Of a DNA stretch of 64,000 bases, positions 26,345-49,868 are shown piece after piece. Below the pieces are notes generated by a model, which did no database searches, was not told where the DNA came from, and saw nothing but the letters and a program-made list of their open reading frames with translations. A program made the position numbers and the translations under genes. How positions within the stretch are numbered: the first letter of the stretch is position 1; each line of letters begins with the position of its first letter. Where the stretch lies: the IMG/VR virus record IMGVR_UViG_3300017528_000567, positions 62,001-126,000 of that record; one strand, 5' to 3'.

Positions 26345-26347
26345 GGC

Positions 26348-30197: not shown

Positions 30198-31067
30198 TTA
30201 GGCCCCGCGCAAGTCGTAGCTTGCGTGCAGAGTGTACTCCTCGAACTCTGCTGCGTAGCGGGATGAACCGGCCTTGAGCGCATCGATGAGCATGCTCGCC
30301 TGACTTTTCGATAGGCCGCGGACCTCTGATGGCTTCGTGGGCGGCGTATCCATGCCCGTGACCTTGGCGGCGCCTGTCGCCTCCCACTTATCCTGCGTCA
30401 TGCCGCGCATCAGGATGCGCAAGAAGTTCATCTGCGGGTCAGTGATCCCGCCCTGCATCCGAGCGGGGTCGTACTGACGAGTCGGCGCAACTGGCGGCGG
30501 TGGAGGCGGAGTGGGAGTACGCGGCCCTTCATCACCCTCACCATCTTCATCGATGGCGCGCTCGCGTTCTTCTTCCAGACGCTCTTGCTCGAGCTTTTCC
30601 TCACGCCGTTGCTCTTGCTTTTCCTCTTGCTCTTGCTCACGCATCGCCCACTCGAGGCTCTTGCCCGGCCTACGTTTAGGTGACGTGGCCCATTGTTCCC
30701 AGGACTCGGGCTTCTCATGGTACGTCTCCATGCACTCCTCGATCCGGTCCTTCAGGGAGTCTCGCCAGTTCTGGGTGCGCTTTGCGATCGCGAACTTGCC
30801 ACCCTCAAGAGCGTTGCCGTCCTTTAGACTGATCAATCCAACCCGGATCGCATCCGAGCCACGCTCAGCCCCGATGCCAGACCTCGCGCGAATGGAGGTC
30901 AAAACCTTGATCCCCACGTAGTGACCCAAGCCCAAGATGAAAACGACTTCGCCCCCGTCTACGGCCTGTTTGGGCCGCATAGCGCGGAAGCTTCTCTTGA
31001 GGAACTTCTCCACTTCCTCAAGAGTGATCTCTGTAAATTGCGCGGCCATCGCCGTTCTTAGCATCAC
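30198..31067 (-). CDS. Hypothetical protein with Glu/Gln/Arg coiled coil and Pro-rich linker
   Basis: 289 aa; start overlaps the helicase stop (ATGA/TGATG); ends ASYDLRGA. Confidence 0.8.
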   Translation of the reverse strand: MMLRTAMAAQFTEITLEEVEKFLKRSFRAMRPKQAVDGGEVVFILGLGHYVGIKVLTSIRARSGIGAERGSDAIRVGLISLKDGNALEGGKFAIAKRTQNWRDSLKDRIEECMETYHEKPESWEQWATSPKRRPGKSLEWAMREQEQEEKQEQRREEKLEQERLEEERERAIDEDGEGDEGPRTPTPPPPPPVAPTRQYDPARMQGGITDPQMNFLRILMRGMTQDKWEATGAAKVTGMDTPPTKPSEVRGLSKSQASMLIDALKAGSSRYAAEFEEYTLHASYDLRGA

Positions 31068-34000
31068 GGTGCCCTCCAGTCATATCCCGCGTCATCCGGC
31101 TCGGACTCTTGCGAAGCAGTGTGTACGTTGTAATAGGCGAGGACCGATCTTGCAGGTGCATCATCGTCGACCAATAGCGGGTCAACGAGGCCAGCGGGCG
31201 CTGCCTTGCCAGGCACGTTCTGGCCGACCATCAACCCAGCTTCCTGGACGAAAATCGGCAGTCCCGCGGCCTCCTTACCATACGCGTTGATGCTCGGACT
31301 CACGACCGTCAAATTTTCCGCTGCGCGAGTCATCCCCACATAGGCCAGTTGCCGCTCTGTAAGAAAGTCTGCGCGCTCATTCTTAGCCCGCTTCTCCAGC
31401 TGGGCGTCAGTCAACGCTTCCTCTTCCTTGGGCGGTAATTTCCGAGGGCCGCGGGGGAACACGCCTTCCGCCATAATCACCGTAGCGTTTTTCCACTGAG
31501 CTCCTTTGACCGAGTGGATTGTTGACAGGACAACACAGGGCGGGTCTTGCCGCTTATCGGGCTCCAGAGCCTTCTGTTTCTGTCTCCATGCGCCTAGGTC
31601 GATACGAAGGTCTTGGGCCTTGGCCTCCAAGTCATCCAAGCGCGCCTTGAACTTCAAAGGGTCAGTCGGGTCTGCCTCAGCTGTCGGTTCGCCTTGAGCT
31701 ATCTGATACAGAAACGCAACGTTGCCGATGGGCTTCTGCTCGTTCACGTCCTCATCGGGGTCGTCTTCCTCCTCATCTTGATTTGAGGAGACTTGTGGCA
31801 TCAGCACATCGATCAGACTCGGCTTCTCGCCCGTGTTCAGATCAGCAGCGCCCTTGATGGTCAGAATCTCATCAATCAGATGCTTGGTGGTGTACTTCAC
31901 CGGCTTACCAGTCGCGCGCTCCGTGATTGAGCCCTTCTTGACGGTCTCGCGCAGTCCCTTGAGAGTCTCACCCAACTCCGTAAGTGCGGCGATCTTCGAT
32001 TCCTCCGCCCATCGCGGGACCTCTGCAGCGTCAATGAAGTCGTATATCCCCTCACGGTCAAACAGGTCGATGGGGTTGACTTGGTTGCTCGACACACCCA
32101 GGCGGTGCGCCCGCTTATTGACTACCTGCTGGACTACCTGTTGAGCACGCCCCGCAGGCAGGTACATACGCTGTGGCTTATCGAGAATCGTAGCCAAAGA
32201 CTGCTGCATCTTGCCGAAATCAACGCCGGACGTCAGGTCCATGTAGCCCATCACAGCAGCGGTTTCTGGCGACTTCAGAAAGCTGGTCCCAGCCTTTCGA
32301 CCGTACGGAATGCCCTCAATGATGCACGCCGTCTCGTAGTCGTTGAGCTCAACGCGATTGCGGCTTAGGACGGCGAAATCCTTGAGCTGGGCACCGGCTT
32401 GGAGCTGTTGCTTGATATCCCCGATCACCGAGACAGCCCCGGCGGCGTTACTCTCGGGCGTCATCAACACCACTGAAGCCTTTCCACGGGGCTTCTTCGG
32501 GTCGGGCCGGCTGCTCATCGGGATCCCACGGGGGTGGTTCTTCATGAGCGTGTTAGCCGTCTCAATGATCTCGGGTAGTGAGCGATAGTTGGTCCCGATC
32601 ATGCGGGTCTTGAAGCAGTCGTTTTCGTGAAACTGAGTGAACAGGTCGGGACGAGCTCCAACGAAGCGATTGATCGATTGAATCTCGTCGCCAACCATCC
32701 AAAGCGACTTCTTCTTGTCGTCGCACTCGACGTGCTCACTCATGTAGCCGATGATCTCATGCTGAACCTCGTTGAGATCCTGGGCTTCATCCACGCAAAC
32801 GTGATCGTACATGCCTTGCAGGGTCTTGCGCGCCGCTGGGTTGCGCTTGAGCAAGTCGCGAGCCATCACGATCATGTCAGAGAAGTCACCGAGACGATCG
32901 CTGCCGCCGTTTCGAAACTCGCCAAGAAAGCCATTCCACTGCTTTTGCGCATCGGGATTCGTGGCCACGCAATCCGGTTTCCACCCCTTGGTGATGCCCT
33001 TGAACCCCTGAGTCCAGGCGTACCAGGTGGCCATCGCTTTCTCCTTGGGATCAAGAGCTTCAGCCAACGCCTGCTCGGGCGTGACGTTGTTCATGATCCA
33101 CCCTTGGACTACGACGCCGGGGGAGCGAGGCGGATCCGTGTCGAAGCAGGTCTTCCACAGCTTCGCCATGGTGATATTCATAATGGTCGAGGTGAGCTTG
33201 CGACCGGTGTTCTTCCCCGGCTTCGGCTTACCTACCTTGGAGCCAATCATATTGGGGCCAAGCGCGGCCTTTTCCTCCGAGCTGCCGTACTGCATCACCA
33301 GCCCTCGGAAGATCTTGTGCATCGTTCCGATGGTCATCTGCTCGGCGGCGTCCTTGCCAACCTTGAGAGCAATCTTTTCCTCGATGCCGGTAGCCGCTTC
33401 CTTGTTGAAGGTCACAGCGAGGATGCGAGACGGCTGCACCCCAAGGTCTTGTACGAGGTGCGCCATACGGCCAATCAGCGTGGTCGTCTTGCCCGACCCT
33501 GCACCCGCGGCGACCAGCACGCGGCCACCGGTCATGGCGGCACGGAGCTGCTCCGGGTCATCCGCGATTGGCCCGCGCAACGCAGAGGGCACGTTTGTCG
33601 GAAGGTCCGGGTCACTCATCGCAGCCGCGACAGCTGCAGTGGCGATACCAATGACCTCAGACCGCGAGGGCGGCTCGTCGGGCTCACCCGATACCGCCAT
33701 GGCGCGCTGTGCCGCCGCAGTCGCCGTTGTCTCAACCCGCAGCAGTTTCTCGGTGTGGGCTGCTTCTGCGGTAGCCGCCTCCTCTGAAGCTGGCGGCGCG
33801 ACTTTTTCTCGAATCTTCTCGGTCACGAGCTCGCTGTTTGCAGCTGCAGATCCGCTGCTGGCTGCCTGAACCGGATTCTGAAACGTACCGGCGCCCGACG
33901 CGTCTTTAGCGTCGTCAATCCACTTGCGCATGCGAGCGTCACGTAGGGGAATAACCGCAAGCTTGTCGAGGGCAACGCCCGCATCCTCGAGACCAGCAGC

Positions 34001-34414
34001 GGCCATCGCCTCCTTCACTTCTTTGCGGGCCTTGTTCGTTTGGAACACGGCTTTCATCGTCGAGGCACCGCCAAGCGACAAAGCCGCACGAATTTCCTCG
34101 CAGCGCCGCCCTAAACCGACCTGCGTAGGCAGACGGCGAAACGCGCGCCCCACCATCGCCTTATGCGATGGTTTCTCGAGATTGCTGTCCAAATAGGCGC
34201 GAACCGCATCTGCGTTCCGACGGTCGGCTATTTTGACAAGCCGTACACCTGCACGAGTGAGGTCATCCTCAGCTCGTTCCCCGTGGTGCTCCTCCACGTA
34301 CCGTACATAAGTGTCCAGTGCGAACAGGAACACGACATACTCGGCTACCTGTAACTCGCCGATTTCATCTTCGGCTTGTGGTTGAAGTGTTGAGGGGTCT
34401 ACAGGAGGGGCCAT
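31064..34414 (-). CDS. uvrD: UvrD/Rep/PcrA-family SF1A DNA helicase with ~280-aa N-terminal extension
   Basis: Motifs AGAGSGKT, AVTFNKEAA, GTMHK, VDEAQD, VGDEIQSI, NYRS, STIHSVKGAQW and ERQLAYVGMTRA are all present. Confidence 0.95.
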   Translation of the reverse strand: MAPPVDPSTLQPQAEDEIGELQVAEYVVFLFALDTYVRYVEEHHGERAEDDLTRAGVRLVKIADRRNADAVRAYLDSNLEKPSHKAMVGRAFRRLPTQVGLGRRCEEIRAALSLGGASTMKAVFQTNKARKEVKEAMAAAGLEDAGVALDKLAVIPLRDARMRKWIDDAKDASGAGTFQNPVQAASSGSAAANSELVTEKIREKVAPPASEEAATAEAAHTEKLLRVETTATAAAQRAMAVSGEPDEPPSRSEVIGIATAAVAAAMSDPDLPTNVPSALRGPIADDPEQLRAAMTGGRVLVAAGAGSGKTTTLIGRMAHLVQDLGVQPSRILAVTFNKEAATGIEEKIALKVGKDAAEQMTIGTMHKIFRGLVMQYGSSEEKAALGPNMIGSKVGKPKPGKNTGRKLTSTIMNITMAKLWKTCFDTDPPRSPGVVVQGWIMNNVTPEQALAEALDPKEKAMATWYAWTQGFKGITKGWKPDCVATNPDAQKQWNGFLGEFRNGGSDRLGDFSDMIVMARDLLKRNPAARKTLQGMYDHVCVDEAQDLNEVQHEIIGYMSEHVECDDKKKSLWMVGDEIQSINRFVGARPDLFTQFHENDCFKTRMIGTNYRSLPEIIETANTLMKNHPRGIPMSSRPDPKKPRGKASVVLMTPESNAAGAVSVIGDIKQQLQAGAQLKDFAVLSRNRVELNDYETACIIEGIPYGRKAGTSFLKSPETAAVMGYMDLTSGVDFGKMQQSLATILDKPQRMYLPAGRAQQVVQQVVNKRAHRLGVSSNQVNPIDLFDREGIYDFIDAAEVPRWAEESKIAALTELGETLKGLRETVKKGSITERATGKPVKYTTKHLIDEILTIKGAADLNTGEKPSLIDVLMPQVSSNQDEEEDDPDEDVNEQKPIGNVAFLYQIAQGEPTAEADPTDPLKFKARLDDLEAKAQDLRIDLGAWRQKQKALEPDKRQDPPCVVLSTIHSVKGAQWKNATVIMAEGVFPRGPRKLPPKEEEALTDAQLEKRAKNERADFLTERQLAYVGMTRAAENLTVVSPSINAYGKEAAGLPIFVQEAGLMVGQNVPGKAAPAGLVDPLLVDDDAPARSVLAYYNVHTASQESEPDDAGYDWRAP

Positions 34415-34426
34415 TCTAGGTTCCGT

Positions 34427-34999
34427 TCAGCAGCGTGGAGGTGGATAACAATCAGCCCCTGGAAACCCGGACGGCGGCTGCGGGCACAAGGAGGGTTGGT
34501 CGGGTTGGGTGTTGCCGGGCATCGGCGCGTTCGGGAAAACCCGAATCAGGCGAGCTCTCCAGTCTGGACACAACGCATGGTCCGGGGGCAACGTGCGCCC
34601 ATCTGCCAAGCAGACCCGGTATGAAAGGCAGGTCCAGACGTTCAAAGGGATCGGGATGCTCTTGTCTTCCCAACCCATGACCGTCTCAACAGTCACGCCG
34701 TAGAGCGTGGCCATCTCCTGTTGAGACATCCGCAGCGACTCCCGGATGAAAACAACCGATTCGGCTCGGATCAGCCCCATCTGGATGAGCGTGCTCGCAG
34801 CTCTAAGATTAGAGACCCGATGAACTTCATCGGAGAAGGACGGCCCCCACTCTCGTAGGATGCCAGGCATCGCAGCCGTGAAGATGAGACCAGTAGCGCC
34901 GACCGGCATCAAAAGATCGAACAACCCCATCTTACCCACTTGCTCGGGGTAGTCGTTCTCAAGAACAACAATCGGGTAGTTCGCTAGATCGTCCGCCAC
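34427..34999 (-). CDS. XRE/MqsA-like helix-turn-helix protein
   Basis: FIRESLRMSQQEMATLYGVTVETVMGWE matches the HTH_3 pattern; GAGG RBS before GTG; Cys/Pro-rich tail. Confidence 0.75.
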   Translation of the reverse strand: MADDLANYPIVVLENDYPEQVGKMGLFDLLMPVGATGLIFTAAMPGILREWGPSFSDEVHRVSNLRAASTLIQMGLIRAESVVFIRESLRMSQQEMATLYGVTVETVMGWEDKSIPIPLNVWTCLSYRVCLADGRTLPPDHALCPDWRARLIRVFPNAPMPGNTQPDQPSLCPQPPSGFPGADCYPPPRC

Positions 35000-35077
35000 T
35001 AGGTCGCCTCAACAGCAGAGCCCGCACACCCAGGCGAGAAAACAAGAAAATCACCGAGCAGAGGTGTAGAGGGACCC

Positions 35078-35929
35078 GTGGAGCTCAACGTAAAGATCGA
35101 AACAGCTCTCTCTGGTCTAGTCAGCGACGCAGTGAGCTTCGAAACGGGGCTCACCAGGGACCAACTAGAGGACCCCACAGTTGTCGCGTACGAGCACCAC
35201 GGAGACAGCTTCAGCACCGACGATAAGGGGGCGTTGCCTTGCTTCTTTGAAGACCTCTTGCTCGGGCGGGCGATGCCCGCCACCTTCGCCACGCGCAGAG
35301 TCCAAGACATCGATACGCTGATGGCCATCGCCCTGTTTCTACACCGGGACCTAGCCATCAACGCCAACACGCCAAGCTTCGTGTATTTGGTCGACTTCGT
35401 GCACCGCCGTGGGCTCCCAGCCCTCGCGCACATCGACGTACCGCTGGCTCGATTTCTATCCGCTGTGCGTACCCACTTCCCGGACAAGGGCCTTTCACAA
35501 CGCGAGCTGAGTCAGCGGGTGCCCGCTGCGATTGGCTGGATTCGAGAGTACATCCACAATGGGATCGTCCCTGTTTTGGGGCAACCGGCCAATGGTGAGA
35601 TCAGGATCCTGGACCAGGGAACACGCGGATTCGCCGTTGCCGAGACGTCCGGCTCTCTCTGGGATGGGTGGGTGGAGCTCTATCGACTAGGCTTTCTGCG
35701 CGGCGTGCTGGTCGCCAGCGATGGCGAACGAAAGCGTGCCCTTGTGGCCAGGAAAAGCCATCACGTGCAGTTCAATCTCGAGACCGCCGCCCGCCTACTC
35801 AACCAGATGGAGCTCGCCATGGGAGAGCCCGCCGAATGGCGCGCATCATCAGACCGGCTCTGGCTAGAATCGCCCGCAGGAACTTTGATACTTTTGAAGG
35901 ATATCCTCGCGGTGTTAACCCGAGTGTAG
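35078..35929 (+). CDS. Hypothetical protein, possibly a permuted DHH-like phosphoesterase; the only plus-strand gene
   Basis: 283 aa with globular composition; GAGGG RBS before GTG; AYEHHG and VQDIDT motifs. Confidence 0.7.
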   Translation: MELNVKIETALSGLVSDAVSFETGLTRDQLEDPTVVAYEHHGDSFSTDDKGALPCFFEDLLLGRAMPATFATRRVQDIDTLMAIALFLHRDLAINANTPSFVYLVDFVHRRGLPALAHIDVPLARFLSAVRTHFPDKGLSQRELSQRVPAAIGWIREYIHNGIVPVLGQPANGEIRILDQGTRGFAVAETSGSLWDGWVELYRLGFLRGVLVASDGERKRALVARKSHHVQFNLETAARLLNQMELAMGEPAEWRASSDRLWLESPAGTLILLKDILAVLTRV

Positions 35930-36260
35930 CCTCGACGCGGCGGAGCAGCGCCACATGGTCGAGGCTCAACTCGCAATCATGAATGGTCGACGTCTCAATG
36001 GCGCGCCGGACCTCACGAGCCGCCAAGGGGGCGATGGCAAGGTCACGACTCTTGAAATAGGCTTGGGCGTAGGGGCCGTCCATCCAGACAGAGCAAAGGG
36101 TATGAAGGAGCTCCAGGTCATCGGCAAAAGTGAGGTCTTCATCACGTCCTTCCAAAGCCTTCTTAACCCTCCGGGTTAAGACTTTCCGCAAAGACTTCAA
36201 AAGCCGCCTGAAGACACCATCTCGAAGGAGGTGTTTACTCATGTCGGGCTTCCCGGCCAT
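35799..36260 (-). CDS. Hypothetical protein (153 aa)
   Basis: Fills the gap after the sheath gene, but its 3' end overlaps the plus-strand gene by 131 nt and the GGAGG is far from the ATG. Confidence 0.4.
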   Translation of the reverse strand: MAGKPDMSKHLLRDGVFRRLLKSLRKVLTRRVKKALEGRDEDLTFADDLELLHTLCSVWMDGPYAQAYFKSRDLAIAPLAAREVRRAIETSTIHDCELSLDHVALLRRVEATLGLTPRGYPSKVSKFLRAILARAGLMMRAIRRALPWRAPSG

Positions 36261-36303
36261 TAGTTACACCGACTGCCTCCCGTGAGGGTCCCGGTTAAGT
36301 GAC

Positions 36304-36336
36304 TCGGGGCCACCCCGCGTCTTGGGGTGGCCCCGA
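36304..36336 (-). terminator. 13-bp GC-rich hairpin 22 nt after the sheath gene (terminator or mRNA-stabilising stem)
   Basis: TCGGGGCCACCCC-GCGTCTT-GGGGTGGCCCCGA is a perfect inverted repeat; no U-tract follows. Confidence 0.65.
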
Positions 36337-36358
36337 ACTGCGTCACAATGGCTCGGCC

Positions 36359-39300
36359 TTAGGCCAAGCGCGCACGAAGATTGAAGGTCAACACGATGTA
36401 CAGGAGCGGGAAAATTGGCGAGTAGTACATCTCGAAGCGCAGAATCGTCGGGTCATCTGGGTCGATAGACGCCGTCATTCCTGTGAAGGCACCGACAATC
36501 TCGGCTTCGACCAGCGACCGGAACAAACCGGTCATGGACACCACCACCTCGTTGGTACGAGCTGCCAGGAACTTGGAGCCCACGAAGCTATCCAGGATTG
36601 AGCGACTCTGCTGCTGCACAAAGTCGGCGATTTGGATAACCGTCGGTAGACGCGTCAAGACCGAGGTCATGTTGGTGGTCAAGCCGTGGCGGATCCGGAT
36701 GATTGGATCGAGATCCTCCAGGATCGTCACACCGGCAACCGCTGTCTGGTTGGCCTCGACCGGGTCCAAGACACGCGGGATACGCGTGAAGCCTTGGATA
36801 CGGCGATGCGTGTATGGGGTCGCCACGTCGACCGCTGGGCTCACGATGGCACCAGAAACGGCTGCTGCGTAGAAGCTACCGTCCACGATGCTGTCAAACG
36901 ACGCGCCGAGCTCATCCGTCAAAGTGATGACCGCCGAGTCCGGGTAGAACGCCACGATACGGCTGGAGTTCAGTGCCCGCGCGATTGATTGAACGCTAGT
37001 GGGCGACGTGCCGGACGCGAATCCGATGAAGCCTTGACGCTCGCTCTGGTTGCGCGGATTGCTCTGAATTTCGCAGTGCGACGTGAGGTGCGTATAGACG
37101 CTCGTGCTCGTAGCCAACGGGATCACGATCCCGGGCCGGATGTTTCCGGGCAACGGACTCGCGAGCTCATCAATGGCGGCGTTGAACGCAGCATCTGAAG
37201 CCTGGTTGGTGTTCGGAACCTTGAGAACCTGCTTGATGATGATGAGTACGGCGCCGTTCAAGATCGCCAGATAAGCAGCCAAGGTCACGCGATTCTCTGC
37301 AGAGGTGCGACCGAATGCAGCTTCGATGGTCTTGAGCTGCTGGTAAATCTTGGCTGAGTAGTCCTGCTTGAGATAGCGGTAGGAGATGAAATAGAAGTCG
37401 CCAACCGCTGGCTCAACCCCGCTCGGGTTGTAGGTCACCAGGCTTGCGGTATCGTTCACCCCAACGCCAACCGTATTGGTCACCAGGAGCTCGAGACCGC
37501 CGATTGAGTAGCGCGGAATGGATGGGCTGACATGCCAGGTCGGGGTCACTTCGAGCGTGAACTGTCCGCCCGTCGTGTAAGCGCCAGTAGAGGCCGGAAG
37601 CACCGTGAAGCGCAGGCCCGTGTTGGCATCCGTGTAGGTTTGCCCCGGAATGCCGACGCCCTCCGATCCGCCCGCCGACGCCGAACTGCTGACCGTGTAG
37701 TTCCCCTGGATGTCCTCTCCAATGTCTCCATCGGTGCCAGGTACGATGCCGGTGCCCGTGGTCGGATTGAACGCTGAGTTGGTGGTCGCGTTGAATCCGA
37801 TGCTCGATAGCACACCCGTCGTGAGCGACTCGATCGTGATGTGGTCCCCGCCGCCGATAGACTCGACGTAGGCAACAGCATCTCCCGAGAAGCCGGTCGG
37901 CCCCATCAGCACATTCACGAGTTCCTGAGCCTCGACCAAGCTCTGGCTCGCCGAATCGTTCTGGATGAATCCAAGCACCGCATTTGCAGAACCGGCGTTG
38001 ATCACCAGCGAAGAACCGGGATCGTTGGTCGTGCTCGTGAGACGGACCTTGTTCAGATTCGACCCGGTGCCAACCGAGGCCGCGGTAGCGACCACCCCAT
38101 TGATGTCTGCAACCACCTGCGTTGCCGTCCGGGCAGCACCCGCGGTCAAGGTCACGTTGTAATCGACGCCGTTCAAACGGAAGTTGAACTTGTCATTCAG
38201 GGCAGCCGTAATGTTGAACGGCCCGATCAGCGAACCCAGCAAAGTTGCGGGCTTGTTGATCGCTCCCGATGTACCACTCACGGAGTCGAAAGCTGTGAAG
38301 CCCAGTACGGATTCGACAGTGCCTTGGTCAATCGTAACGTTCGAGCTCGTATCAAACCCGCCTGGCAATGCAGCAGGAGTAACAGTGCTCTTGATGATGA
38401 AGAATACGTCTCCTGTGGCGCCAATCTGTTCGAAGGTGGCGGTAGCAAGAGTACCGGGAGAGGTGGCAGCAGCTAGACCCGTGGTGATGAAACCAGCGAT
38501 GGCAGCGGGCGTCTGCGCTCCAGCCGGGATCGAGATGTCCGGAACGGCAACGCCGTTGATCTTGAGCTTCAGTACGTTTCCTGGAGAGGCCGGAATCGTG
38601 ATGGCGGTCCCACCAAGAGCGGTCAGAGGCACACGCGCACCGACCATAACAGCGGGTGACGCTGTGTTCAGGTTTGCAGTGACAGGATTACCGTCGACTT
38701 CAGTCTCCCAAGTGGCCGAGAACGGGCTGTAGAACGAATACGGGGCCGCGCCCTTGTTCGTGAAAGCTGCGTTCGTCGCGGGCGCCTCACCGAACGTGAC
38801 GGTCACCACCTCGGAAATCGGCGTACCATCTCCCGTGTGAAACGCGTCGGGGATCAGCTCGACACCGCGAGGCCACTGCACAATCTGAGAAAACCCTGTC
38901 TTGGTTCCGAAGCGGACCTCGAACAGATTCTTGTTCTGCGTGCTCGAGAATACCGTGTACTGGCCAGCACCAACTGCCCCAGGTACGACGTTCGTAAAGA
39001 TATACGTGTCGTCTACCAGACGGCTGTAATAGAAGGTCGCATACGCATGATAGTCAGGAGGCTGTGAGGCCTTGAGTTTGATGCGACGGGTCGTGCCGTC
39101 GACCTCAAGAACCTCGACGGCCGGGCGATTCAGCGCGTCTCGCAACGTGCGGCCCGTGTAAACCTTCACGAGGTCGGGGCGATTCGTCACCAGATCTTGC
39201 CGGCTGTTGGCAACGGAGTTGAACGTGCTCAGACCCAGCGCGGTGCTGCGCCCATTACCCGTGGTCGGAACCTCAGGCAGCAAATAGTCCGTCGGAGATA

Positions 39301-40756: not shown

Positions 40757-40770
40757 GATCCCTAGGGATC
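40757..40770. promoter_or_regulatory. Perfect 14-bp palindrome upstream of the sheath gene
   Basis: GATCCCTAGGGATC in the 180-nt intergenic gap. Confidence 0.4.
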
Positions 40771-40843
40771 AACTACATCTCCACGCGATGGGAGCAATCT
40801 GATAGGACTAGACAACAAAAGAACTATTACCCCACTGGGTGGG

Positions 40844-41266
40844 TCAGCTGCGCCGCTCTCCCCGTATCCTCTTGAAGGCTTCACGGGCCAGCACTTTGCG
40901 AGCTGCTCTACCTTGATCTGACATAGGTTCATAATCGACGTAGTCCTGGCCTGTACGTCGAATCAGAGCGTGGGTCTCTCCTTGTGCCCGTGCCTGCTTT
41001 TTCACAGTCTCACGGGCCTGAATGTGCTCCCACCGTTCGCTGGCGTTTCGGCCAATGGCCTTGTCTGCCGACGGGTAATCGTGGTCGTGCACCCCGGAGT
41101 TAGCCGGCGCCCCCGAGCCCTGAGCAAACGCGAAATCGAACCCGCTGGGCACGAGCGGAGCCGAAGCCCGGCAGTTGGGGCAAGGATAAGAGACGTAGTT
41201 CTCCACCCGAAGGTTTCTCTCAAAGCGCAACACACAGGCAGAGCACTCAAAAGCATACCGCGGCAT
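40844..41266 (-). CDS. FmdB-family zinc-ribbon protein
   Basis: MPRYAFECSACVLRFE...YPCPNC matches the FmdB-type MPxYxYxCxxC...CPxC pattern. Confidence 0.8.
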   Translation of the reverse strand: MPRYAFECSACVLRFERNLRVENYVSYPCPNCRASAPLVPSGFDFAFAQGSGAPANSGVHDHDYPSADKAIGRNASERWEHIQARETVKKQARAQGETHALIRRTGQDYVDYEPMSDQGRAARKVLAREAFKRIRGERRS

Positions 41267-41274
41267 TGTCCATC

Positions 41275-42432: not shown

Positions 42433-42465
42433 CGCGTTGAGGAGGTTGTAGTAGATGGCAGCCCC

Positions 42466-43488
42466 CTACCCAGAGTGCTCCTCGGTCGCCAGCACAAGGA
42501 GCCCTTCAGCAACAGCGGTCATCGGATCTTTGGCCGGGCGGACCTCGCTGATCTGAATCGGAAAGCCCCGCTTCTTGATCGCCTCGAATTCGTCCATGAA
42601 GACTTCCATGAAGCCCCCGGCGCGCGTCGTGCCCCCACTCACAATGAAAGGGATCGGCTCGGGCAGATTGATCCCCGCCTGATTCTTCCGGAACTGGACG
42701 GCGATGTTCTCGAGCACGTACTTGATGAGCGACCGAATGTAGAGCGCGACCGCTTCTTCCTCGCGGGATTGCGGCTTGACGAGCTCAACGCCCTTTTCCT
42801 TGATCGCGCACATACGAGCGGCCGTGTTGCCCACCGCCTTTGCAGCGTGCGAGTCGACCCAGTCACCCCCGCGAGCAACGGAGAAATCCATGCCCTTGAT
42901 GGTCTGATATGCCAGCGCGATGTTGCCCATACCAGAGCCAAAGCTCACGGATAGACCAGAGAAGTTCTCCGCGGCGCATTGCGAGTAGATGATCGCCATG
43001 GCCTCGTTCATGGGGTGCGGCGTGTACCCGAGCTCCCCGAGGATCTTCCGAAAGACCTCTTGGTGGTAGATGATGTCCTGGGCGGTATCATCCACAGGGG
43101 ACGCCGGCACACTGTAGTAACAGTGCTCGCCCTTCACGATGGGCTCACCGATGACGTTTGAGATCAACAGGCTGAGGATCTGCTGGGCGTCCAACTCTCC
43201 CGCCGCGATCACACCCCTGCTTAGCGGGCGCCGTACCTCGCGATTGAACAGGTTAGCCATGGTCAACGCGGAGTCGCCAAGTACGACCAGGGTGCCTTGG
43301 CGCTCTACGTAGTCGACCTTAGAAAGGCGAAGCGTCTTCTTCGCCTCTAGATCCAAGTCAAGGAAGGCGTCACGAATTCGTCTCAACTCCAGGCTGTCCC
43401 CGTCCGCCAACTGGCGGGCTGAGACGATATTCATAGTGCCTAAGTCGAGCCCACACGCGGGCTTGTATTTTGACATCTCAATCTCCAT
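42466..43488 (-). CDS. Actin-family ATPase, volactin/MamK-like
   Basis: Phosphate-1 GLDLGTMN, connect-1 NEAMA, phosphate-2 SFGSG, ARGGDWVD, adenosine VSGGT and connect-2 TAVAEG. The likely start is ATG 43476 (GGAG RBS). Confidence 0.88.
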   Translation of the reverse strand: MEIEMSKYKPACGLDLGTMNIVSARQLADGDSLELRRIRDAFLDLDLEAKKTLRLSKVDYVERQGTLVVLGDSALTMANLFNREVRRPLSRGVIAAGELDAQQILSLLISNVIGEPIVKGEHCYYSVPASPVDDTAQDIIYHQEVFRKILGELGYTPHPMNEAMAIIYSQCAAENFSGLSVSFGSGMGNIALAYQTIKGMDFSVARGGDWVDSHAAKAVGNTAARMCAIKEKGVELVKPQSREEEAVALYIRSLIKYVLENIAVQFRKNQAGINLPEPIPFIVSGGTTRAGGFMEVFMDEFEAIKKRGFPIQISEVRPAKDPMTAVAEGLLVLATEEHSG

Positions 43489-43514
43489 CCATAGGCCCGA
43501 TTATTGGGCGCGGT

Positions 43515-44159
43515 CTAACGACTGTCGTAACTGTAGGTTTCCGGGCCTCCCCTACGCTGCTGCAGCAGGTAGACGAACTCTTCATGCTTATCTGCTACAC
43601 CTTGCAGCAGGTTGTCCGTTCCTGAGCTCAGAGCGCCCCTATCCTCTAGCCGGCTCCTTGCCGTCTCCAGGCAATCGACCACGCATCGCTCCACCTCAAG
43701 ACTCTGTCCAACCATCTCTAAGGGAGTCGGGGGCGCAGGCGACCGGCACCAGTGCCGCACCAAAACGGGGATCATATCGGCCTGAAGTTTGGGGCACACC
43801 GCGGCATCGCCCCCCGTACCGACCGCCCTCTCTGCGATTTGATCGATGAAGCCTACCGATTCGTTGTAGAGCCGCTCGAACAAGAGATGGTCGCCGTACT
43901 GAGCCGTCCCATAGGTTTGCCAGTGGTGACTTTGGTGAACCAACGCGGCGGCTCTCAACACCGCGACCAAGACGCCGAGCTCCGAGGCCAGAGTTCCTTC
44001 GGGCATCTCGAGCAACAGGGACTCTAGTACCCCATCACCCATCGACGCGATCTTGGGCTTGGATTCCGGCAAATAGGGCGCGCCGTTGTCGGACGGCTCA
44101 AAAGCCAGCGGATCAACCCAGAGAGCATGTATGGAGTCTTGTCCCATGGGGGTCACCAC
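43515..44159 (-). CDS. Dps / ferritin-like protein
   Basis: HQSHHWQTYG...YGDHLLFERLY...IDQIAER and NLLQGVADKHEEFVYLL are Dps-like four-helix-bundle signatures. Confidence 0.82.
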   Translation of the reverse strand: MVTPMGQDSIHALWVDPLAFEPSDNGAPYLPESKPKIASMGDGVLESLLLEMPEGTLASELGVLVAVLRAAALVHQSHHWQTYGTAQYGDHLLFERLYNESVGFIDQIAERAVGTGGDAAVCPKLQADMIPVLVRHWCRSPAPPTPLEMVGQSLEVERCVVDCLETARSRLEDRGALSSGTDNLLQGVADKHEEFVYLLQQRRGGPETYSYDSR

Positions 44160-44458
44160 GCATCGTCATCATCCCACCCCGGCCCGCGAGCATTCTTTTC
44201 CTTGCGCTCCTCCTTCATCTCCTTGCCAACTTGAGCTGGCGTAAAGCGCTCAGGTCGCGCGGAAAAAGACTTCCCAGAGAACGGCGACTTAACGGTTGTC
44301 CTCTTGGTCTCTAGATAGAAAACATTGCCGTCTGCGTCCTGGTACTTCCAAAGAAGTGCCGCACCACTTGGCTGAACGGAGTCGATTCCTGCTCTACGAG
44401 AGACTCTGGCGGCCAGAGCTCTGGCCTCCGCTGATACACTGGCTTGACGTGGATGCAT
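44153..44458 (-). CDS. Hypothetical protein (101 aa)
   Basis: Co-oriented; overlaps the Dps-like gene start; purine-rich RBS upstream. Confidence 0.7.
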   Translation of the reverse strand: MHPRQASVSAEARALAARVSRRAGIDSVQPSGAALLWKYQDADGNVFYLETKRTTVKSPFSGKSFSARPERFTPAQVGKEMKEERKEKNARGPGWDDDDAW

Positions 44459-44509
44459 GGATGGATTGTTCCTCTTCCTCTATTCAGGGGTTTTGCAAGA
44501 AAGGTTTAA

Positions 44510-45151
44510 TCAAGGGCTCCGTTCTTTCTTGCGCAGCTGGCGCAAAAGATCGGCGGCCTCGGTGACCGCGTCCGATGTGGACTCCTCACCCTGAATATTG
44601 ATGCGAGCGTCAAGGTCCTTGGACCGAATCTCTGCAGGGAGAAACGTCGGAGCGGAGCCGTCTACAACCTCTTCCACGGGCTTCGCTGCTGGGGCACCTG
44701 CCACAGGTGGAGCTACTCCAACAGCTGGCGATGCCGCCACGCCTGACTGGATTGCCTTCAAGATCTCGTCGAGTTTGGCGGAATGGGCGTGCGCGCTACC
44801 GTCGAGCTGCCGCTTCAACGCCTCATTCTCGGTCTGTAGACGTGCGGCGAGGGCTTCCAGCTGCGCCGTGTACTTCTCCAGGCGAGCCTTATCCGGGTCT
44901 TGCGGAGCGCCCGCCGTCCCGCTCGGGTATGGTGCCGATGGGACCTGGCATAGGAAGCCTTGCGAGATCGCGCGCCAGAGATCTTTAGATATCAAGGCCT
45001 GATCCTCCGGGATGACCACCAACGTCCGAAACGCTACGTCCCTGCCGATGTCCTCGATCACGTGATTGCCGGCAACCATCCCAATCACGCGCACGTCGCC
45101 TCTCATCTTTTTCATCCATCGATTCCTCAGCCATTTACATAGGCGGCGCAT
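44510..45151 (-). CDS. Hypothetical coiled-coil protein
   Basis: Start is ATG 45151 (coupled to the upstream TGA) or ATG 45115 (GAGGA RBS); the track start at 45298 overlaps the upstream gene. Confidence 0.7.
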   Translation of the reverse strand: MRRLCKWLRNRWMKKMRGDVRVIGMVAGNHVIEDIGRDVAFRTLVVIPEDQALISKDLWRAISQGFLCQVPSAPYPSGTAGAPQDPDKARLEKYTAQLEALAARLQTENEALKRQLDGSAHAHSAKLDEILKAIQSGVAASPAVGVAPPVAGAPAAKPVEEVVDGSAPTFLPAEIRSKDLDARINIQGEESTSDAVTEAADLLRQLRKKERSP

Positions 45152-45152
45152 A

Positions 45153-45689
45153 TCACTTCTTCTTCGCGGCTTTGCGCAGTTGCTTCGCGACTTCCTGCTT
45201 GAACTTGTCGCGAAGAAACGCCCGAGCTTCCTGCTTAGCGCGTTGTAAAAAGTCCGAGGGCTGCCGTCCTGGGTGCAACCAGCCCCGTTTTCGCCCAACG
45301 TTTGGACCTGTCATCGGCCCCTGTGACCAAGTCAAAGACCGAGCATGAGCGCTCCGGAAGATCAGCTTGCCGGTCTCTGTGATGATCGGAATTGGGCGCT
45401 TGGCCTTCTTGAGCCAAGTCATCTGCCGGCGCTTCTGGCCCAGCACGAGGGCCTCAAACCCCGGATGGTCGGTTGTCACCACCAGAGAGGCGGGTCGCAT
45501 CTCAACCTTAATGGATTTGGCCAGGGACTTCTTGGCTCTAGCCGAGTACGTGGTCTGCGCGAGCTTTTTCCTGATACGGGTCATGAGCTCCGTGCGAGCC
45601 TTCCGCAGGGCTGGCTCCATGTCGCCGACGGATGAGAGCCCGCCTCCGAACAGAGGATTCATCATCACGCGTGCTGCGATGAACGCCAT
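45153..45689 (-). CDS. Neck / tail-completion protein (HK97 gp10-like)
   Basis: Basic 178-aa protein with ...WLHPG...FLQRA ending typical of gp10-like neck proteins; sits in the neck cluster. Confidence 0.55.
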   Translation of the reverse strand: MAFIAARVMMNPLFGGGLSSVGDMEPALRKARTELMTRIRKKLAQTTYSARAKKSLAKSIKVEMRPASLVVTTDHPGFEALVLGQKRRQMTWLKKAKRPIPIITETGKLIFRSAHARSLTWSQGPMTGPNVGRKRGWLHPGRQPSDFLQRAKQEARAFLRDKFKQEVAKQLRKAAKKK

Positions 45690-47050
45690 TAGTACTCGAT
45701 GTTCTCCCAGACCTTAGTCCGGCCTCTAAGCTCCCGCTCATCCGGGATATTGGGCTTCTCCGTGATGCTGGTGTCGGCCTCGCGCTCGGGTCCCGACGGT
45801 GCAAACTGCACAGCCGCGAACTTCACCGGATTGCCCACCGGCACGCGATAGCGGATATCCTGCTCATCTAGATGGCCGATGTTGAAGTGCTGCTGAAGCA
45901 CCATGCCGCGATTCGAAGGAAAGCGAACCGCGCCAATCGAATACCGCTCGCCGTTGAGCTTCACCACGAAATCGCGCTGAGACAGAATAGGAGCCGGGCC
46001 AGTCCACACCTCATACGTGTGCTCGACCGAGCGTCCGGTCTCCTTCTGAGTGATGCGGCGGTCAGCATCGTCGGGTGCGATCAGGGCATCATAAGGCCCC
46101 TCGTACCCGCCAAGAAAACCAGTCCCGTAGCACTTGGGACAGTCGTTGATCGGCTGCTTGTGGTAGTCATCCGGCACGCACGAGCAAGGCACCCCGACGT
46201 GTTTGCGAAGGAAAATCTTCACGCGCTCGCCACCCTGCTCTAGGATGAACCGGTTGCGACGCACCGACTCACGCCAGATGTAATCGAGCTTCTCGATCTC
46301 CATCGAGTTCGTAGCCGTTGCAAACTCGATCGGAGTCTCGATCAAGTTCTCACATTGCACTTGGCTCAAGTCACAGCCCACGCGGACCCCGACGCTCGTG
46401 ACTCGATAGAAGACCCGTTGCGCGAGGTCCGTGCGCAGGAGCTCGCGATTACGTCGATACGTACAGGTGACGATGCTGTTCGGGCCGGGGACCAGGGACG
46501 GGTCCCACTGTTGCCGCGTCACGTCCGCGTAGATGTACGGGTCAATCTCAACTTCACCAGAGAACCCGTGCACCTTCAATGGCCGGACGGTGACCCCGTC
46601 GATCTTGACCCATACGTCATCTGGCAGATCCGCGGTAATCGCCTGCGAACCCTCCCGTACGATCGGGCTATGCAACGTCTTGAAAACCCAACGTGGCGCG
46701 GCTGGCCCAGCCGCCGATTCTTCTTCGCCTTTGAGAACGAAACGCCCCGTAACGTCCTCGTCTACGATGAGCTCATTGTCGGTCTGGTCGCGCCAATAGT
46801 TAGCGCAGATGAGCAACTCGGAGATGCGCTCGAAGGGGCCGTACTCAGAATCAAACGAACGGTACAGATTGACCCCGAGCAGCTGATACAGGCTGTTCAA
46901 GGGGAGCGTCGCCGGGGAGTCCCATCTGAGATCGAACACCCCGGGGCGATACCCGCTGGTCAGAAACAAGTTGAGCGGAGGCAGCGGCCAAGGAGTCTTG
47001 GTGTACTCCAGCTCGGTCGTGTTCCAATCGCGATTTGATGCATACGGCAC
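45689..47050 (-). CDS. Head-closure / neck protein with Zn finger
   Basis: GGERVKIFLRK...CSC...DCPKCYGTGFLGGY followed by a head-closure-like WTGPAPILSQRDFVV...RYSI segment; Fn3-like N-terminus. Confidence 0.65.
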   Translation of the reverse strand: MPYASNRDWNTTELEYTKTPWPLPPLNLFLTSGYRPGVFDLRWDSPATLPLNSLYQLLGVNLYRSFDSEYGPFERISELLICANYWRDQTDNELIVDEDVTGRFVLKGEEESAAGPAAPRWVFKTLHSPIVREGSQAITADLPDDVWVKIDGVTVRPLKVHGFSGEVEIDPYIYADVTRQQWDPSLVPGPNSIVTCTYRRNRELLRTDLAQRVFYRVTSVGVRVGCDLSQVQCENLIETPIEFATATNSMEIEKLDYIWRESVRRNRFILEQGGERVKIFLRKHVGVPCSCVPDDYHKQPINDCPKCYGTGFLGGYEGPYDALIAPDDADRRITQKETGRSVEHTYEVWTGPAPILSQRDFVVKLNGERYSIGAVRFPSNRGMVLQQHFNIGHLDEQDIRYRVPVGNPVKFAAVQFAPSGPEREADTSITEKPNIPDERELRGRTKVWENIEY

Positions 47051-47087
47051 GGGCTACCCCTCTAGAGAGAGGGCACAAGAGAAAAGA

Positions 47088-47390
47088 CTAGGGAGCCGCG
47101 GGCTCCTCCGAGGCGGCTTCTGCCTTCCGGTCCAAAAGCTTGATCTCACCTGTCTTGTCATTGATGGAGACGGGGGTGCCCGGCTGAAGCCCCCGCTCGA
47201 TCAGCACCTGCTCGAACAAGCGTTGCTTCTGCTGGTCCACCTGATGAGCAGCCGCCAGAACTCGGACCCGCTCCTGCTCGAGTTCGAGTAGGCGCAGCCC
47301 GAGCTCGTAGCGGGCTCCATCAAGCTCAGAGAATTTGGCGAGAACATCCGCCTGTACCGGGTCACTTAGGGTCAGGGCCGACTTGGGCAT
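47088..47390 (-). CDS. Small coiled-coil hypothetical protein (100 aa)
   Basis: ATG 47390 preceded by GGGGG after the upstream TAG. Confidence 0.7.
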   Translation of the reverse strand: MPKSALTLSDPVQADVLAKFSELDGARYELGLRLLELEQERVRVLAAAHQVDQQKQRLFEQVLIERGLQPGTPVSINDKTGEIKLLDRKAEAASEEPAAP

Positions 47391-47397
47391 GCCCCCG

Positions 47398-48273
47398 CTA
47401 CACCAGAAGTTTCCAGACAGCGTCACGCCACCAGCTGGCAACCCGCTTCAGCCAAGTCTGCGGGGTTCCAGGCGGCGGCTCAGGCGGCGGCTCAGGCGGC
47501 GGCGCTGGCGGTCTCGCCTCCTCCACAAGGGCGCGCATCCTTTGCGGGTCGCCGGTCGCCCGATGGTACCGGCTCGCCAGGTGTCCGTTCATGCCAGGGC
47601 GGTTCTGGCCCTCCCACATTTTGTTGGAGGCGTTGTGCCCAATGCTCGGGTGCCAAAGGTGCAAGACTTCGGCGTTCAGCGTCTTGTGCTTGCCGAACAA
47701 TGTATCGACAGCCCGCACAAAGGCCACATCCTCCCCGCCCCAACCCTCGAACCTCGGATCCATGCCGCCGACGCTCTCGAAAGCCTCGCGAGGCATGATT
47801 TGCACCATGGCCCCAAAATGGTGACCATACGTCGCCGTGGTCATCGACTCCACGTCCTCTGCAGCCGGCGGTGAGGGCAGCCGGACCGGCCACTTCGGGT
47901 CTGAGTTCAGGATGAGCTCAGTACTCGCCTCCACGAGGCGGTACAGACGGCGGTACGGGATGAACCAGCGGTTTTGCCCACGCCGAGCCGACTCTTCAAT
48001 GGCTCGTGCAGCCCGAAGAATCGTGTCGCCCCTGAGATAGGCATCGGAGTCCAGCAGCACAAAGATGCGGCCATGCGCCTTCTTCGCCGCATCATTGAGA
48101 GCTTCGGTCTTAGAGAAAGACGGGTTCGTAGAGGTGCCGATCACGACCTCTGCGTCCGGCAACTCGTACTGCCAGTAGGTTCGCAGCCAACTCCACAGCC
48201 GCGTCCGGTGCGGCGATGACGCACTTGCCCGGAACGGTACCAACAATGAGATTTGCGGTCTAGGATAGGTCAT
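47398..48273 (-). CDS. Glycosyltransferase (GT-A fold, GT2/GT7-like)
   Basis: LLVPF, FSKTEALNDA, LLDSD (DxD) and GGMDPRFEGWGGED. Confidence 0.88.
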   Translation of the reverse strand: MTYPRPQISLLVPFRASASSPHRTRLWSWLRTYWQYELPDAEVVIGTSTNPSFSKTEALNDAAKKAHGRIFVLLDSDAYLRGDTILRAARAIEESARRGQNRWFIPYRRLYRLVEASTELILNSDPKWPVRLPSPPAAEDVESMTTATYGHHFGAMVQIMPREAFESVGGMDPRFEGWGGEDVAFVRAVDTLFGKHKTLNAEVLHLWHPSIGHNASNKMWEGQNRPGMNGHLASRYHRATGDPQRMRALVEEARPPAPPPEPPPEPPPGTPQTWLKRVASWWRDAVWKLLV

Positions 48274-49022
48274 TTGGACAACCCCGCCAGTTTGCGCCCG
48301 TACTCCTCGAACACGTCGAAAAGTTCGTGCTGACGATCTTGAACCTTGTAGCGATGTGCCTCCTGAGTCACCCCAATCTGAAAGGGGACGCCAACGGCGG
48401 CACAGTGATCGCGGAACTTGAAGTCTCCGCCCTCCTTGGCAAATCTCTCGGTCATCTCAATTCGCCGCGGGATACCAAAGGCATCCGCCACGATGATCCC
48501 ATGGAGCGATGAGGAAACGATTTTCCGGCACTCACCGATCTTGCGTATCACCTCAAGCGGGTCCTCCGTTGGGCGAATAATCACGGGATTGTAACGCAGG
48601 AACTCAGGCCTTTGCTCCAAGGTCGTGTCCGACCAGTGCGGAACTATCCCAAGCGCGTGCTTCTTCTCCTGCCGCGGCACGAGCTCGTCCGCAAGAAGCC
48701 CCGCGTCACCAAGGACAAACTCCTTTTTCACACCCTTTACGCACTGCGCTGTCAGCGGCCCGCGTAGCGCCAATACCTGCGCTCGCGATAGATCAATGCT
48801 GCTGCCCTCCTTCAACTTACCCGAGCCAATGATCGTTCCGGCCCAGCCCGGAGGTAGATGCTCTAGGACAGAACCGACGCACACAAAGTTTGCTTCGCTG
48901 ACTGGAGCCCACGCCACCTCCAGATCGGCAAAGTGTGACAACAGCAAAGGTGTCAAAAGATCGCCGAAATTAGGTCTTCCACGCCACCAATAGCCAGTAG
49001 GAGCTACGCGAGAAGAAAGCAT
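48270..49022 (-). CDS. Polysaccharide pyruvyl transferase family protein
   Basis: NFGDLL, VGSVL, ALRGPLT, GDAGLL, VPHWSD and SSSLHGIIVADAFGIP. Confidence 0.88.
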   Translation of the reverse strand: MLSSRVAPTGYWWRGRPNFGDLLTPLLLSHFADLEVAWAPVSEANFVCVGSVLEHLPPGWAGTIIGSGKLKEGSSIDLSRAQVLALRGPLTAQCVKGVKKEFVLGDAGLLADELVPRQEKKHALGIVPHWSDTTLEQRPEFLRYNPVIIRPTEDPLEVIRKIGECRKIVSSSLHGIIVADAFGIPRRIEMTERFAKEGGDFKFRDHCAAVGVPFQIGVTQEAHRYKVQDRQHELFDVFEEYGRKLAGLSK

Positions 49023-49070
49023 AAAGCAAATTCTCCGGTGAAGGCCTACCAGTGTAATTTCATAAGGAGT

Positions 49071-49868
49071 CTATAACAGTTCGGCCTCCGAAAACGCCTG
49101 GTAAACCGCTGTCAAGATCAGCTTACGGCTGCGGGCGTTGAGATCCTTCTCGATCGCCGACCACGTAAAAGACAGCCGCAACGACGTGTCGACTAACTGG
49201 CGCCCGCTCATGTGCTCCTTGAGCTTGTGTGCCATTCGCACTGTCTCATCGACCACCTGTTGCATGAACGCTCTGACCTCTTTCGGGTCGTTTACATAAC
49301 TTTTCTGGTCCTTGACCTTGTGGTCCTCGTCATGCTCGTACTGACGCGGTGCGCGAAACGCCGCCTCCGCGGCGTGGGTCACCTCGTGAATCAAGATGCT
49401 GTACAGACCATACGGAAGGCATGTCTCGTGAGTACACTCGCCCAACGGCTGAAAGTACTCTGTGACAAAGTTGGTGAGGTCTCGATCCGGCCCGTTAGTA
49501 CCCAGGTACTCGTTCGGAGAAATGGCGCCATTCAGCCAAAGTACGACCTGCACGACGGCAGAGCCATTTTCGAAGCGCCGTCGCCCGGCCTCTCCGCCTA
49601 GCACCGGAAACTTCTTGGCGCTGGAAGCAGCTGCAATCACGATGACATCGATCCGGAGCTGCTCCTGCCCGTCGACCGAATCCGCGTAGAAATTCGTTTC
49701 GGCCAGCCCGGTTCGAGCACTGCTGCCGATCGGCTGGTCCGGATGCGGGTGACGCTTCAGCCAGCGCTTTATCTGCGGGACCAAGTCCTTTTCGACGGCA
49801 TACCTGATCGTTGCCTTGTCTATGCGAATCGGTCGCGCCGCCATCCTGCGGTCGTAACTGTACCCCAC
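49071..49868 (-). CDS. Zincin-like HExxH protein
   Basis: ILIHEVTHAAE with downstream YVNDPKEVRAF; AGGAGG RBS; N-terminus MGYSYDRR. Confidence 0.65.
   Translation of the reverse strand: MGYSYDRRMAARPIRIDKATIRYAVEKDLVPQIKRWLKRHPHPDQPIGSSARTGLAETNFYADSVDGQEQLRIDVIVIAAASSAKKFPVLGGEAGRRRFENGSAVVQVVLWLNGAISPNEYLGTNGPDRDLTNFVTEYFQPLGECTHETCLPYGLYSILIHEVTHAAEAAFRAPRQYEHDEDHKVKDQKSYVNDPKEVRAFMQQVVDETVRMAHKLKEHMSGRQLVDTSLRLSFTWSAIEKDLNARSRKLILTAVYQAFSEAELL

What the first reader, a model, noticed from the sequence alone, without database searches (positions are those of the whole stretch)
30198..49868. Shared terminal YDxR peptide in four unrelated proteins
Seen: the helicase ends AGYDWRAP*, the 289-aa protein ends ASYDLRGA*, the Dps-like protein ends YSYDSR*, and the HExxH protein begins MGYSYDRR. 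The 29583 protein has internal KTASYDN. The motif sits on unstructured termini outside the conserved domains. Inference: a common sorting signal, such as capsid-targeting/ejection or protease recognition, analogous in role to the T4 internal-protein capsid-targeting sequence. It would mark a set of enzymes packaged or co-localised together.
Basis: partly seen in the sequence, partly recalled or inferred. Interest (0 to 1): 0.68.

Follow-up and report, generated by a model that had tools for sequence, protein, structure and literature searches.

The report
Shared terminal peptide tag, huge phages
A clade of uncultured huge phages puts the same short peptide (Tyr-Asp-x-Arg, often Tyr-Ser-Tyr-Asp-x-Arg) at the extreme start or end of a dozen unrelated proteins per genome, which looks like a common address tag, but what reads the tag is not yet known.

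Summary
All four window proteins carry YDxR within 0-4 residues of a terminus. The 255-kb phage contig holding the window has 8 more carriers, mostly starting M-T-Y-D-F-R. YD.R ranks first of 7,459 gapped patterns by terminal count. Over six related genomes, 39 of 99 occurrences are terminal against 9.5% expected (P=2e-15); scrambled controls show nothing.

Carriers are mutually unrelated apart from one paralogous pair. Motif codons vary synonymously. Orthologue tails keep the motif while the flanking residues diverge. The tail of the 289-aa protein is predicted disordered.

The genomes are huge phages with a phage-G-like capsid protein. A 485-kb outgroup phage lacks the motif.

The reader of the tag is unresolved:
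Some carriers sit inside the head-gene module, and several carry metallopeptidase or helicase domains.
- Recognition by a clade-specific Cdc48-like double-ring AAA+ unfoldase (about 0.28). It is present in all nine tag-bearing genomes checked and absent from the outgroup.
- Phage ClpX is disfavoured. One apparently complete tag-bearing genome lacks it.

One relative carries a second tag, L-W-D/E-H-L, at the end of about 45 mostly unrelated small proteins.

The parts
30198..31067 (-). 289-aa protein of unknown function, C-terminal tag carrier. Its start overlaps the helicase stop.
   Evidence: There are 24 homologues. The closer ones end in YDLR, YDSR, YDWR, YDQR or YDFR. The tail 270-289 has pLDDT<50. 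No fold match was found.
30207..30218 (-). Codons for Y-D-L-R, two residues before the stop
31064..34414 (-). UvrD-family helicase (1116 aa), C-terminal tag carrier and the most widely conserved one
   Evidence: Pfam. Orthologue tails end YDRRAP, YDRRNV and YDRRAL, with the variant SYAR.
31073..31084 (-). Codons for Y-D-W-R, two residues before the stop
43515..44159 (-). Ferritin/Dps-like protein (214 aa), C-terminal tag carrier
   Evidence: Tails in 26 related loci keep [SG]-Y-D-x-R or Y-S-Y-[AG]-R. The outgroup orthologue ends without a tail.
43518..43529 (-). Codons for Y-D-S-R, directly before the stop
49071..49868 (-). HExxH metallopeptidase-like protein (265 aa), N-terminal tag carrier. 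Its paralogue at genome 196171-196932 starts M-W-R-Y-D-Y-R.
   Evidence: 35% identity, E=5e-45. One search gives weak Atlas leads to LPD23 and SprT-like.
49845..49856 (-). Codons for Y-D-R-R, residues 5-8 counted from the GTG start

Best explanation
Shown: YDxR, with extended consensus [YF]-[ST]-Y-D-x-R-x(0-2)-A, is a peptide-level short linear motif. It lies in disordered extensions 0-6 residues from either terminus of about a dozen unrelated proteins per genome. It occurs across a clade of huge phages and is gained and lost on individual proteins over time. Inferred: it is a common address tag read by one shared receptor. My commitment, at low confidence: the tag loads these proteins into the assembling head by binding a scaffold or inner-capsid component, so that they travel with the DNA and are ejected into the next host. 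On this reading the phage delivers separate tagged enzymes (helicase, DNA-coating Dps-like protein, SprT-like and HExxH metallopeptidases, J-domain protein, many ORFans). P1 does this with its Dar proteins, T4 with its internal proteins, and other elements with single giant polyvalent proteins. No binding, packaging or cleavage step has been demonstrated.
For: A real, selected tag: (enrichment and controls); and (carriers unrelated; synonymous codon variation; orthologue tails keep the motif while flanks diverge; disordered tail). Clade-wide occurrence. Head loading in particular rests on four points. (1) The capsid protein was identified at genome 142814-143695 (PDB 6wkk, phage G gp27, E=3e-61), with portal and maturation protease nearby. 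(2) Two G000 carriers lie directly downstream of the capsid gene. Two G019 carriers lie between the protease gene and the next head gene. One carrier each lies about 1 kb and 4 kb from the capsid gene in two further genomes. (3) Carrier domains (SprT-like, HExxH with a weak LPD23 lead, helicase) are those of co-injected anti-defence proteins (established knowledge of P1 Dar and polyvalent proteins). [quoted passage not shown]
Against: The outgroup phage LR745208.1 has the same head module, with an 85% identical capsid protein, but no tag. Carriers are not significantly enriched in structural regions: about 6 of roughly 80 lie in head modules, about twice the expectation. No conserved protease site follows the N-terminal tags. 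The T4 signal is N-terminal only. Carriers such as a J-domain protein and a winged-helix protein are unusual virion cargo. No virion data exist for this clade.
Confidence: 0.3

Rival explanations
1. The tag is a recognition signal for a phage-encoded AAA+ unfoldase. The main candidate is the clade-specific Cdc48-like double-ring ATPase (genome 31678-33237), which has no N-terminal adaptor domain. It would engage tagged termini and unfold the proteins, for timed turnover or remodelling.
For: Near-terminal placement at either end, with variable offset, is typical of substrates threaded from a terminus (established knowledge of ClpX signal classes). The ATPase is present in all nine tag-bearing genomes checked and absent from the tag-less outgroup. 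Its model aligns over its full length with p97/Cdc48 D1-D2 (Foldseek E=1e-18; PDB sequence hits). The carriers (a Dps-like protein, a repair-type helicase, proteases, small regulators) resemble typical AAA+ protease substrates. E. coli Dps is a known ClpXP substrate (established knowledge).
Against: 33 other core genes share the same distribution, so the correlation rests on one outgroup. No partner peptidase was found: there is no ClpP in four of five genomes, and the neighbouring 399-aa gene is uninformative. G017 has both unfoldases but only one carrier. The docking test could not be run.
Confidence: 0.28
2. The tag is a degron or tether for the phage-encoded ClpX, working with host ClpP.
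For: The clade encodes a bona fide ClpX (PDB ClpX E=1e-101) with the zinc-binding domain, the GYVG pore loop and a retained [LMV]-G-F ClpP-docking loop. Its RKH specificity loop is rebuilt. ClpX is absent from the tag-less outgroup.
Against: G031 (301.5 kb, with matching ends, so probably complete) has at least 5 N-terminal carriers but no ClpX or AAA_2 domain in three searches. G017 has ClpX at 62% identity but only the helicase carrier.
Confidence: 0.07
3. The tag docks proteins onto some other hub, phage or host: for example a DNA-bound platform, a replication factory or condensate, a chaperone, or a modifying enzyme that acts on the Tyr or Arg.
For: 34 clade-specific core genes are mostly without any family assignment. 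Several carriers act on DNA. The motif is polar and aromatic (Tyr, Arg), which fits groove or strand-addition binding.
Against: The sliding clamp is unlikely because the polymerase and ligase do not carry the tag. The actin-like protein is unlikely because the tag-less outgroup has it at 55% identity. No candidate stands out.
Confidence: 0.3
4. There is no common function. The pattern comes from chance, shared ancestry of the carriers, or a DNA/RNA-level signal at gene boundaries.
For: Gene starts were called crudely. One carrier pair is paralogous.
Against: Pooled P=2e-15, with scrambled controls flat. Carriers are unrelated in two genomes. Codons vary at synonymous sites and Arg uses both CGN and AGG. 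The same peptide occurs at both N- and C-termini.
Confidence: 0.03

Closest known systems
T4 capsid-targeting sequence of the internal proteins
   Same: A short shared leader on otherwise unrelated, fast-evolving small phage proteins. A head maturation protease is encoded.
   Different: Here the tag also sits at C-termini and on large enzymes. No cleavage site is evident after it. There is no sequence resemblance. Packaging has not been shown.
Encapsulin cargo-loading peptides
   Same: A short peptide in a disordered terminal extension, usually C-terminal and sometimes N-terminal, on cargo that includes ferritin/Dps-like proteins. The shell is HK97-fold. Some cargo genes lie beside the shell gene.
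   Different: Encapsulin peptides are hydrophobic Gly-Ser-Leu-type motifs, whereas this one is Tyr-Asp-x-Arg. The shell here is a DNA-filled phage capsid. Most carriers are not adjacent to the capsid gene.
ClpX and other AAA+ protease recognition signals (degrons)
   Same: Short motifs at either terminus of unrelated proteins. Dps and DNA-repair proteins are classic substrates. The phages encode ClpX and a Cdc48-like unfoldase.
   Different: The motif matches no described ClpX class. One tag-bearing genome lacks ClpX. No peptidase partner is encoded in most genomes.
P1 Dar proteins and polyvalent proteins of phages and conjugative elements
   Same: Helicase and SprT-like/HExxH metallopeptidase domains delivered with the DNA to counter host defence.
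   Different: Those are giant fusions or rely on specific packaging partners. Here the domains are separate proteins sharing a peptide tag, and delivery is not shown.

Membership tests
T4-type capsid-targeting sequence | Shared N-terminal leader on unrelated proteins | tested here: inconclusive
   Most carriers are N-terminal (9 of 13 in G000, 11 of 13 in G019). The helicase, Dps-like and 289-aa proteins carry the tag at the C-terminus.
T4-type capsid-targeting sequence | Leader followed by a prohead-protease site and removed on maturation | tested here: inconclusive
   A maturation protease gene is present. By eye, no conserved cleavage motif follows the tag, only a frequent Ala 1-3 residues after the Arg.
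T4-type capsid-targeting sequence | Carriers present in mature heads | not testable with these tools
   The clade is uncultured. Only indirect phage G particle data are available.
Encapsulin cargo-loading peptide | Short peptide in a disordered terminal extension of the cargo | tested here: met
   pLDDT<50 for residues 270-289 of the 289-aa protein. The tails lie outside the Pfam domains.
Encapsulin cargo-loading peptide | Hydrophobic Gly-Ser-Leu-type consensus | tested here: not met
   The consensus here is [YF]-[ST]-Y-D-x-R. The encapsulin consensus is taken from established knowledge.
Encapsulin cargo-loading peptide | Cargo gene adjacent to the shell gene | tested here: inconclusive
   Met for a few carriers in four genomes, but not for most.
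ClpX recognition signal | ClpX present wherever the tag is used | tested here: not met
   G031 has carriers but no ClpX.
ClpX recognition signal | ClpX-dependent binding or degradation | not testable with these tools
Tag for the Cdc48-like AAA+ unfoldase | Unfoldase co-occurs with the tag and is absent where the tag is absent | tested here: met
   There is only one outgroup, and 33 other genes share the pattern.
Sliding-clamp binding motif | The replicative polymerase and ligase carry the motif | tested here: not met
   The polymerase (genome 34520-37474) and ligase (182013-183935) are not among the carriers.

The most novel reading that the evidence does not exclude
These huge phages run a virus-encoded protein-addressing code with at least two terminal tags: YDxR at either end, and L-W-D/E-H-L at the C-terminus of about 45 proteins in one relative. 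The code would route dozens of unrelated accessory proteins to dedicated phage machines, either the two phage unfoldases or the capsid interior. That would be a sorting or proteostasis layer not described for any virus of bacteria.
Probability: 0.3. Interest if true: 0.85.

Novelty: new variant of a known kind. Interest (0 to 1): 0.7.

Why it matters
A portable 6-8-residue tag that marks a phage's own cargo or substrates would immediately define a functional class among hundreds of ORFans in huge phages. At least 292 related contigs exist in IMG/VR. It would also give a handle for finding the receptor. If the tag loads heads, it offers a natural route to package chosen proteins into very large capsids. 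If it is an unfoldase tag, it would show that phages bring their own substrate-selection system along with their own ClpX or Cdc48-like machines.

Tried and rejected
- DNA-level motif: rejected. Synonymous codon variation and use of both CGN and AGG Arg codons argue against it.
- Paralogy: rejected. Only the two HExxH proteins are related, and the 12 G019 carriers share no similarity.
- Shared promoter or missing ribosome-binding site upstream of N-terminal carriers: nothing specific was found.
- Gene presence against carrier richness: this picked genome 17617-19176, but its sequence shows DHH and GGGH motifs of a DHH-type phosphoesterase (motifs read by eye with no family scan). I treat the match as coincidence.
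- Actin-like protein as the hub: the tag-less outgroup has it.
- An ORF starting M-I-Y-D-Y-R beside the outgroup capsid gene: spurious, because it overlaps a 1229-aa gene.
- Fold search of the 289-aa model: no significant match.
- Atlas look-ups of the HExxH protein and of the gene next to the unfoldase: uninformative or weak.
- Literature searches for the motif: nothing found.
Full report
**What is there.** The window is part of a 255,478-bp virus contig, estimated 54% complete. It encodes a terminase, DNA polymerase, clamp loader, UvsX-like recombinase, NAD ligase, baseplate wedge, portal and head maturation protease. Its capsid protein matches phage G gp27 (PDB 6wkk, E=3e-61). It is therefore a huge phage. 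Its relatives in IMG/VR are 300-530 kb, and the actin-like gene next to the Dps-like gene finds 292 related contigs.

The four proteins are mutually unrelated.

**It is not chance.** A crude whole-contig ORF call found further carriers outside the window. Six proteins start M-[TQ]-Y-D-[FY]-R. One starts M-W-R-Y-D-Y-R and is a paralogue of the window HExxH protein. One starts M-P-H-A-Y-D-H-R.

- YD.R ranks first of 7,459 gapped patterns by number of terminal occurrences, although it occurs only 20 times in all.
- 11 of those 20 lie in terminal windows that hold 8% of positions (P=9e-8).
- Pooled over six related genomes, 39 of 99 are terminal (P=2e-15). Scrambled or substituted versions (R.DY, DY.R, YE.R, FD.R, YD.K and others) stay at 4-13%.

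**It is a peptide signal.**

- The motif codons vary at synonymous positions, and Arg is encoded by both CGN and AGG.
- Of the 26 Dps-like loci found in related contigs, the 22 with an informative C-terminal tail (36-81% identical) mostly end in Y-S-Y-D-S-R, G-Y-D-F-R, S-Y-D-R-R plus 1-5 residues, or Y-N-Y-D-R-R. The linker before the motif is not conserved. A shorter variant, Y-S-Y-[AG]-R, occurs in one subgroup.
- The helicase orthologues end in YDRR plus two residues in three further genomes, and in SYAR in a fourth.
- The 289-aa family keeps YDxR in its closer members and loses it in others.
- The AlphaFold model of that protein has a confident body and a tail (270-289) with pLDDT below 50.

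**The tag moves between proteins.**

- G019 (398 kb, terminal repeats): 11 N-terminal and 2 C-terminal carriers, mostly M-(x)-Y-S-Y-D-[HR]-R. The 12 examined share no similarity with each other.
- G003: about 10 carriers. G005 and G001: fewer.
- G017 (411 kb, complete): only the helicase tail.
- More distant clade members show many in-frame M-x(0-4)-Y-D-x-R starts.
- Orthologues of a carrier in one genome often lack the tag in another.

Annotated carriers include a SprT-like peptidase, two HExxH proteins, a J-domain protein with the HPD motif, a zinc-ribbon protein, a JAB-like protein and a winged-helix protein. Most carriers are ORFans.

The offset from the terminus is 0-6 residues at either end. 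An Ala often follows the Arg within 1-3 residues at both ends. The working consensus is [YF]-[ST]-Y-D-x-R-x(0-2)-A.

**Outgroup.** The 485-kb uncultured phage LR745208.1 shares 81 genes with the contig, including the actin-like protein (55% identity) and the capsid protein (85%). It has no terminal enrichment: 1 of 11 occurrences. Its Dps-like protein stops right after the last helix, and its HExxH orthologue has no motif.

**Who reads the tag?**

*ClpX.* The clade encodes a bona fide ClpX with the zinc domain, the GYVG loop and a ClpP-docking [LMV]-G-F loop, but a rebuilt RKH loop. Four of five genomes checked have no ClpP. ClpX is absent from the outgroup. However, G031 (301.5 kb) has the last 60 bases of the contig repeated at position 67. 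That indicates a terminal repeat of about 127 bp, and IMG/VR classes the record as having direct terminal repeats, so it is probably complete. G031 has at least five carriers and no ClpX. G017 has ClpX but only one carrier.

*Cdc48-like ATPase.* A second unfoldase is present in every tag-bearing genome checked and absent from the outgroup. Its model aligns end to end with the D1-D2 rings of p97/Cdc48 and has no N-terminal adaptor domain. It is a plausible pore-type reader of termini. Against this, 33 other core genes share the same distribution, and 20 of the 40 candidates from the earlier five-genome comparison were scanned and gave no significant family assignment.

*Head loading.* This has circumstantial support. 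Two carriers lie directly downstream of the capsid gene in this genome. Two lie between the protease gene and the next head gene in G019. One each lies within about 1 and 4 kb of the capsid gene in two further genomes. That is only about twice the chance expectation. [quoted passage not shown]

**Verdict.** I put about 0.95 on a real selected signal and about 0.8 on a single shared reader. For the use of the tag I put head loading with co-ejection at 0.30, the Cdc48-like unfoldase at 0.28, ClpX at 0.07, and another hub or modifying enzyme at 0.30. I found no description of this motif in the literature held here. Phage-encoded ClpX itself is known from Lak phages, Atu_ph07 and phage G.

**Limits.** Gene calls are longest-ORF, greedy calls. 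N-terminal assignments assume the ATG, or a GTG with a ribosome-binding site, just upstream of the motif. The contig is a fragment. There is only one outgroup.

Noticed in passing
Relative G019 (IMGVR_UViG_3300017991_000048), mostly 22-82 kb; loci L121-L124: About 45 ORFs of 55-408 aa end in (T/N/D)-L-W-[DE]-H-[LVI] plus 1-6 mostly acidic residues. Only 17 of 990 pairs are related once the tail is removed. This is a second, larger terminal tag. Traces occur in G003 (2) and G017 (1), both of which have ClpX. The ClpX-less G031 has only one weak match (A-L-W-Y-H). The window's contig has one doubtful match (T-L-W-S-H-L ending a 70-aa ORF).
   Followed up: partly
Genome 25714-26970 (-), outside the window; L002:7714-8970: Phage-encoded ClpX with zinc domain, GYVG loop and ClpP-docking loop, but a non-conserved RKH loop and no phage ClpP. 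In two relatives (G027, G030) the ClpX match is split by about 1 kb inside one 777-781-aa frame, which may be an intein.
   Followed up: partly
Genome 31678-33237 (-), outside the window; L002:13678-15237: Cdc48/p97-like protein with a degenerate D1 and an active D2 and no N-domain. It is conserved in more than 150 metagenomic proteins. One homologue carries an intein domain.
   Followed up: partly
window 42466-43488 (-): Actin-like protein of the Volactin family (Pfam E=3e-72), next to the Dps-like gene. It is conserved at 57-100% identity in the best 80 of 292 matching IMG/VR contigs, and at 55% in the outgroup.
   Followed up: partly
Genome 142814-143695 (-), outside the window: The capsid protein is 85-96% identical across genomes whose other core proteins are 30-70% identical, which is unusually strong conservation.
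   Followed up: no
Genome 248500-255287 (-), outside the window: Five tandem paralogues (380-540 aa) share a C-terminal W-L-P-W-D-G-[AT]-T region. This is ordinary paralogy, not a tag.
   Followed up: partly
window 35078-35929 (+): A lone plus-strand ORF (283 aa) inside the minus-strand block is conserved at 36-60% identity in all ingroup genomes. It is probably a real gene overlapping the 162-aa minus-strand ORF at 34999-35487.
   Followed up: partly
window 30198-31067 (-), residues 268-275: All 22 aligned members of the 289-aa family keep an invariant R-x-A (mostly R-Y-A) followed by an acidic stretch just before the tag position. The C-terminal helical domain weakly resembles the Red-beta C-terminal domain that binds the SSB tail (Foldseek probability 0.8, E about 0.8).
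   Followed up: partly
Relative G003, 24494-26523: The HExxH homologue, here without the tag, lies immediately downstream of clpX.
   Followed up: no
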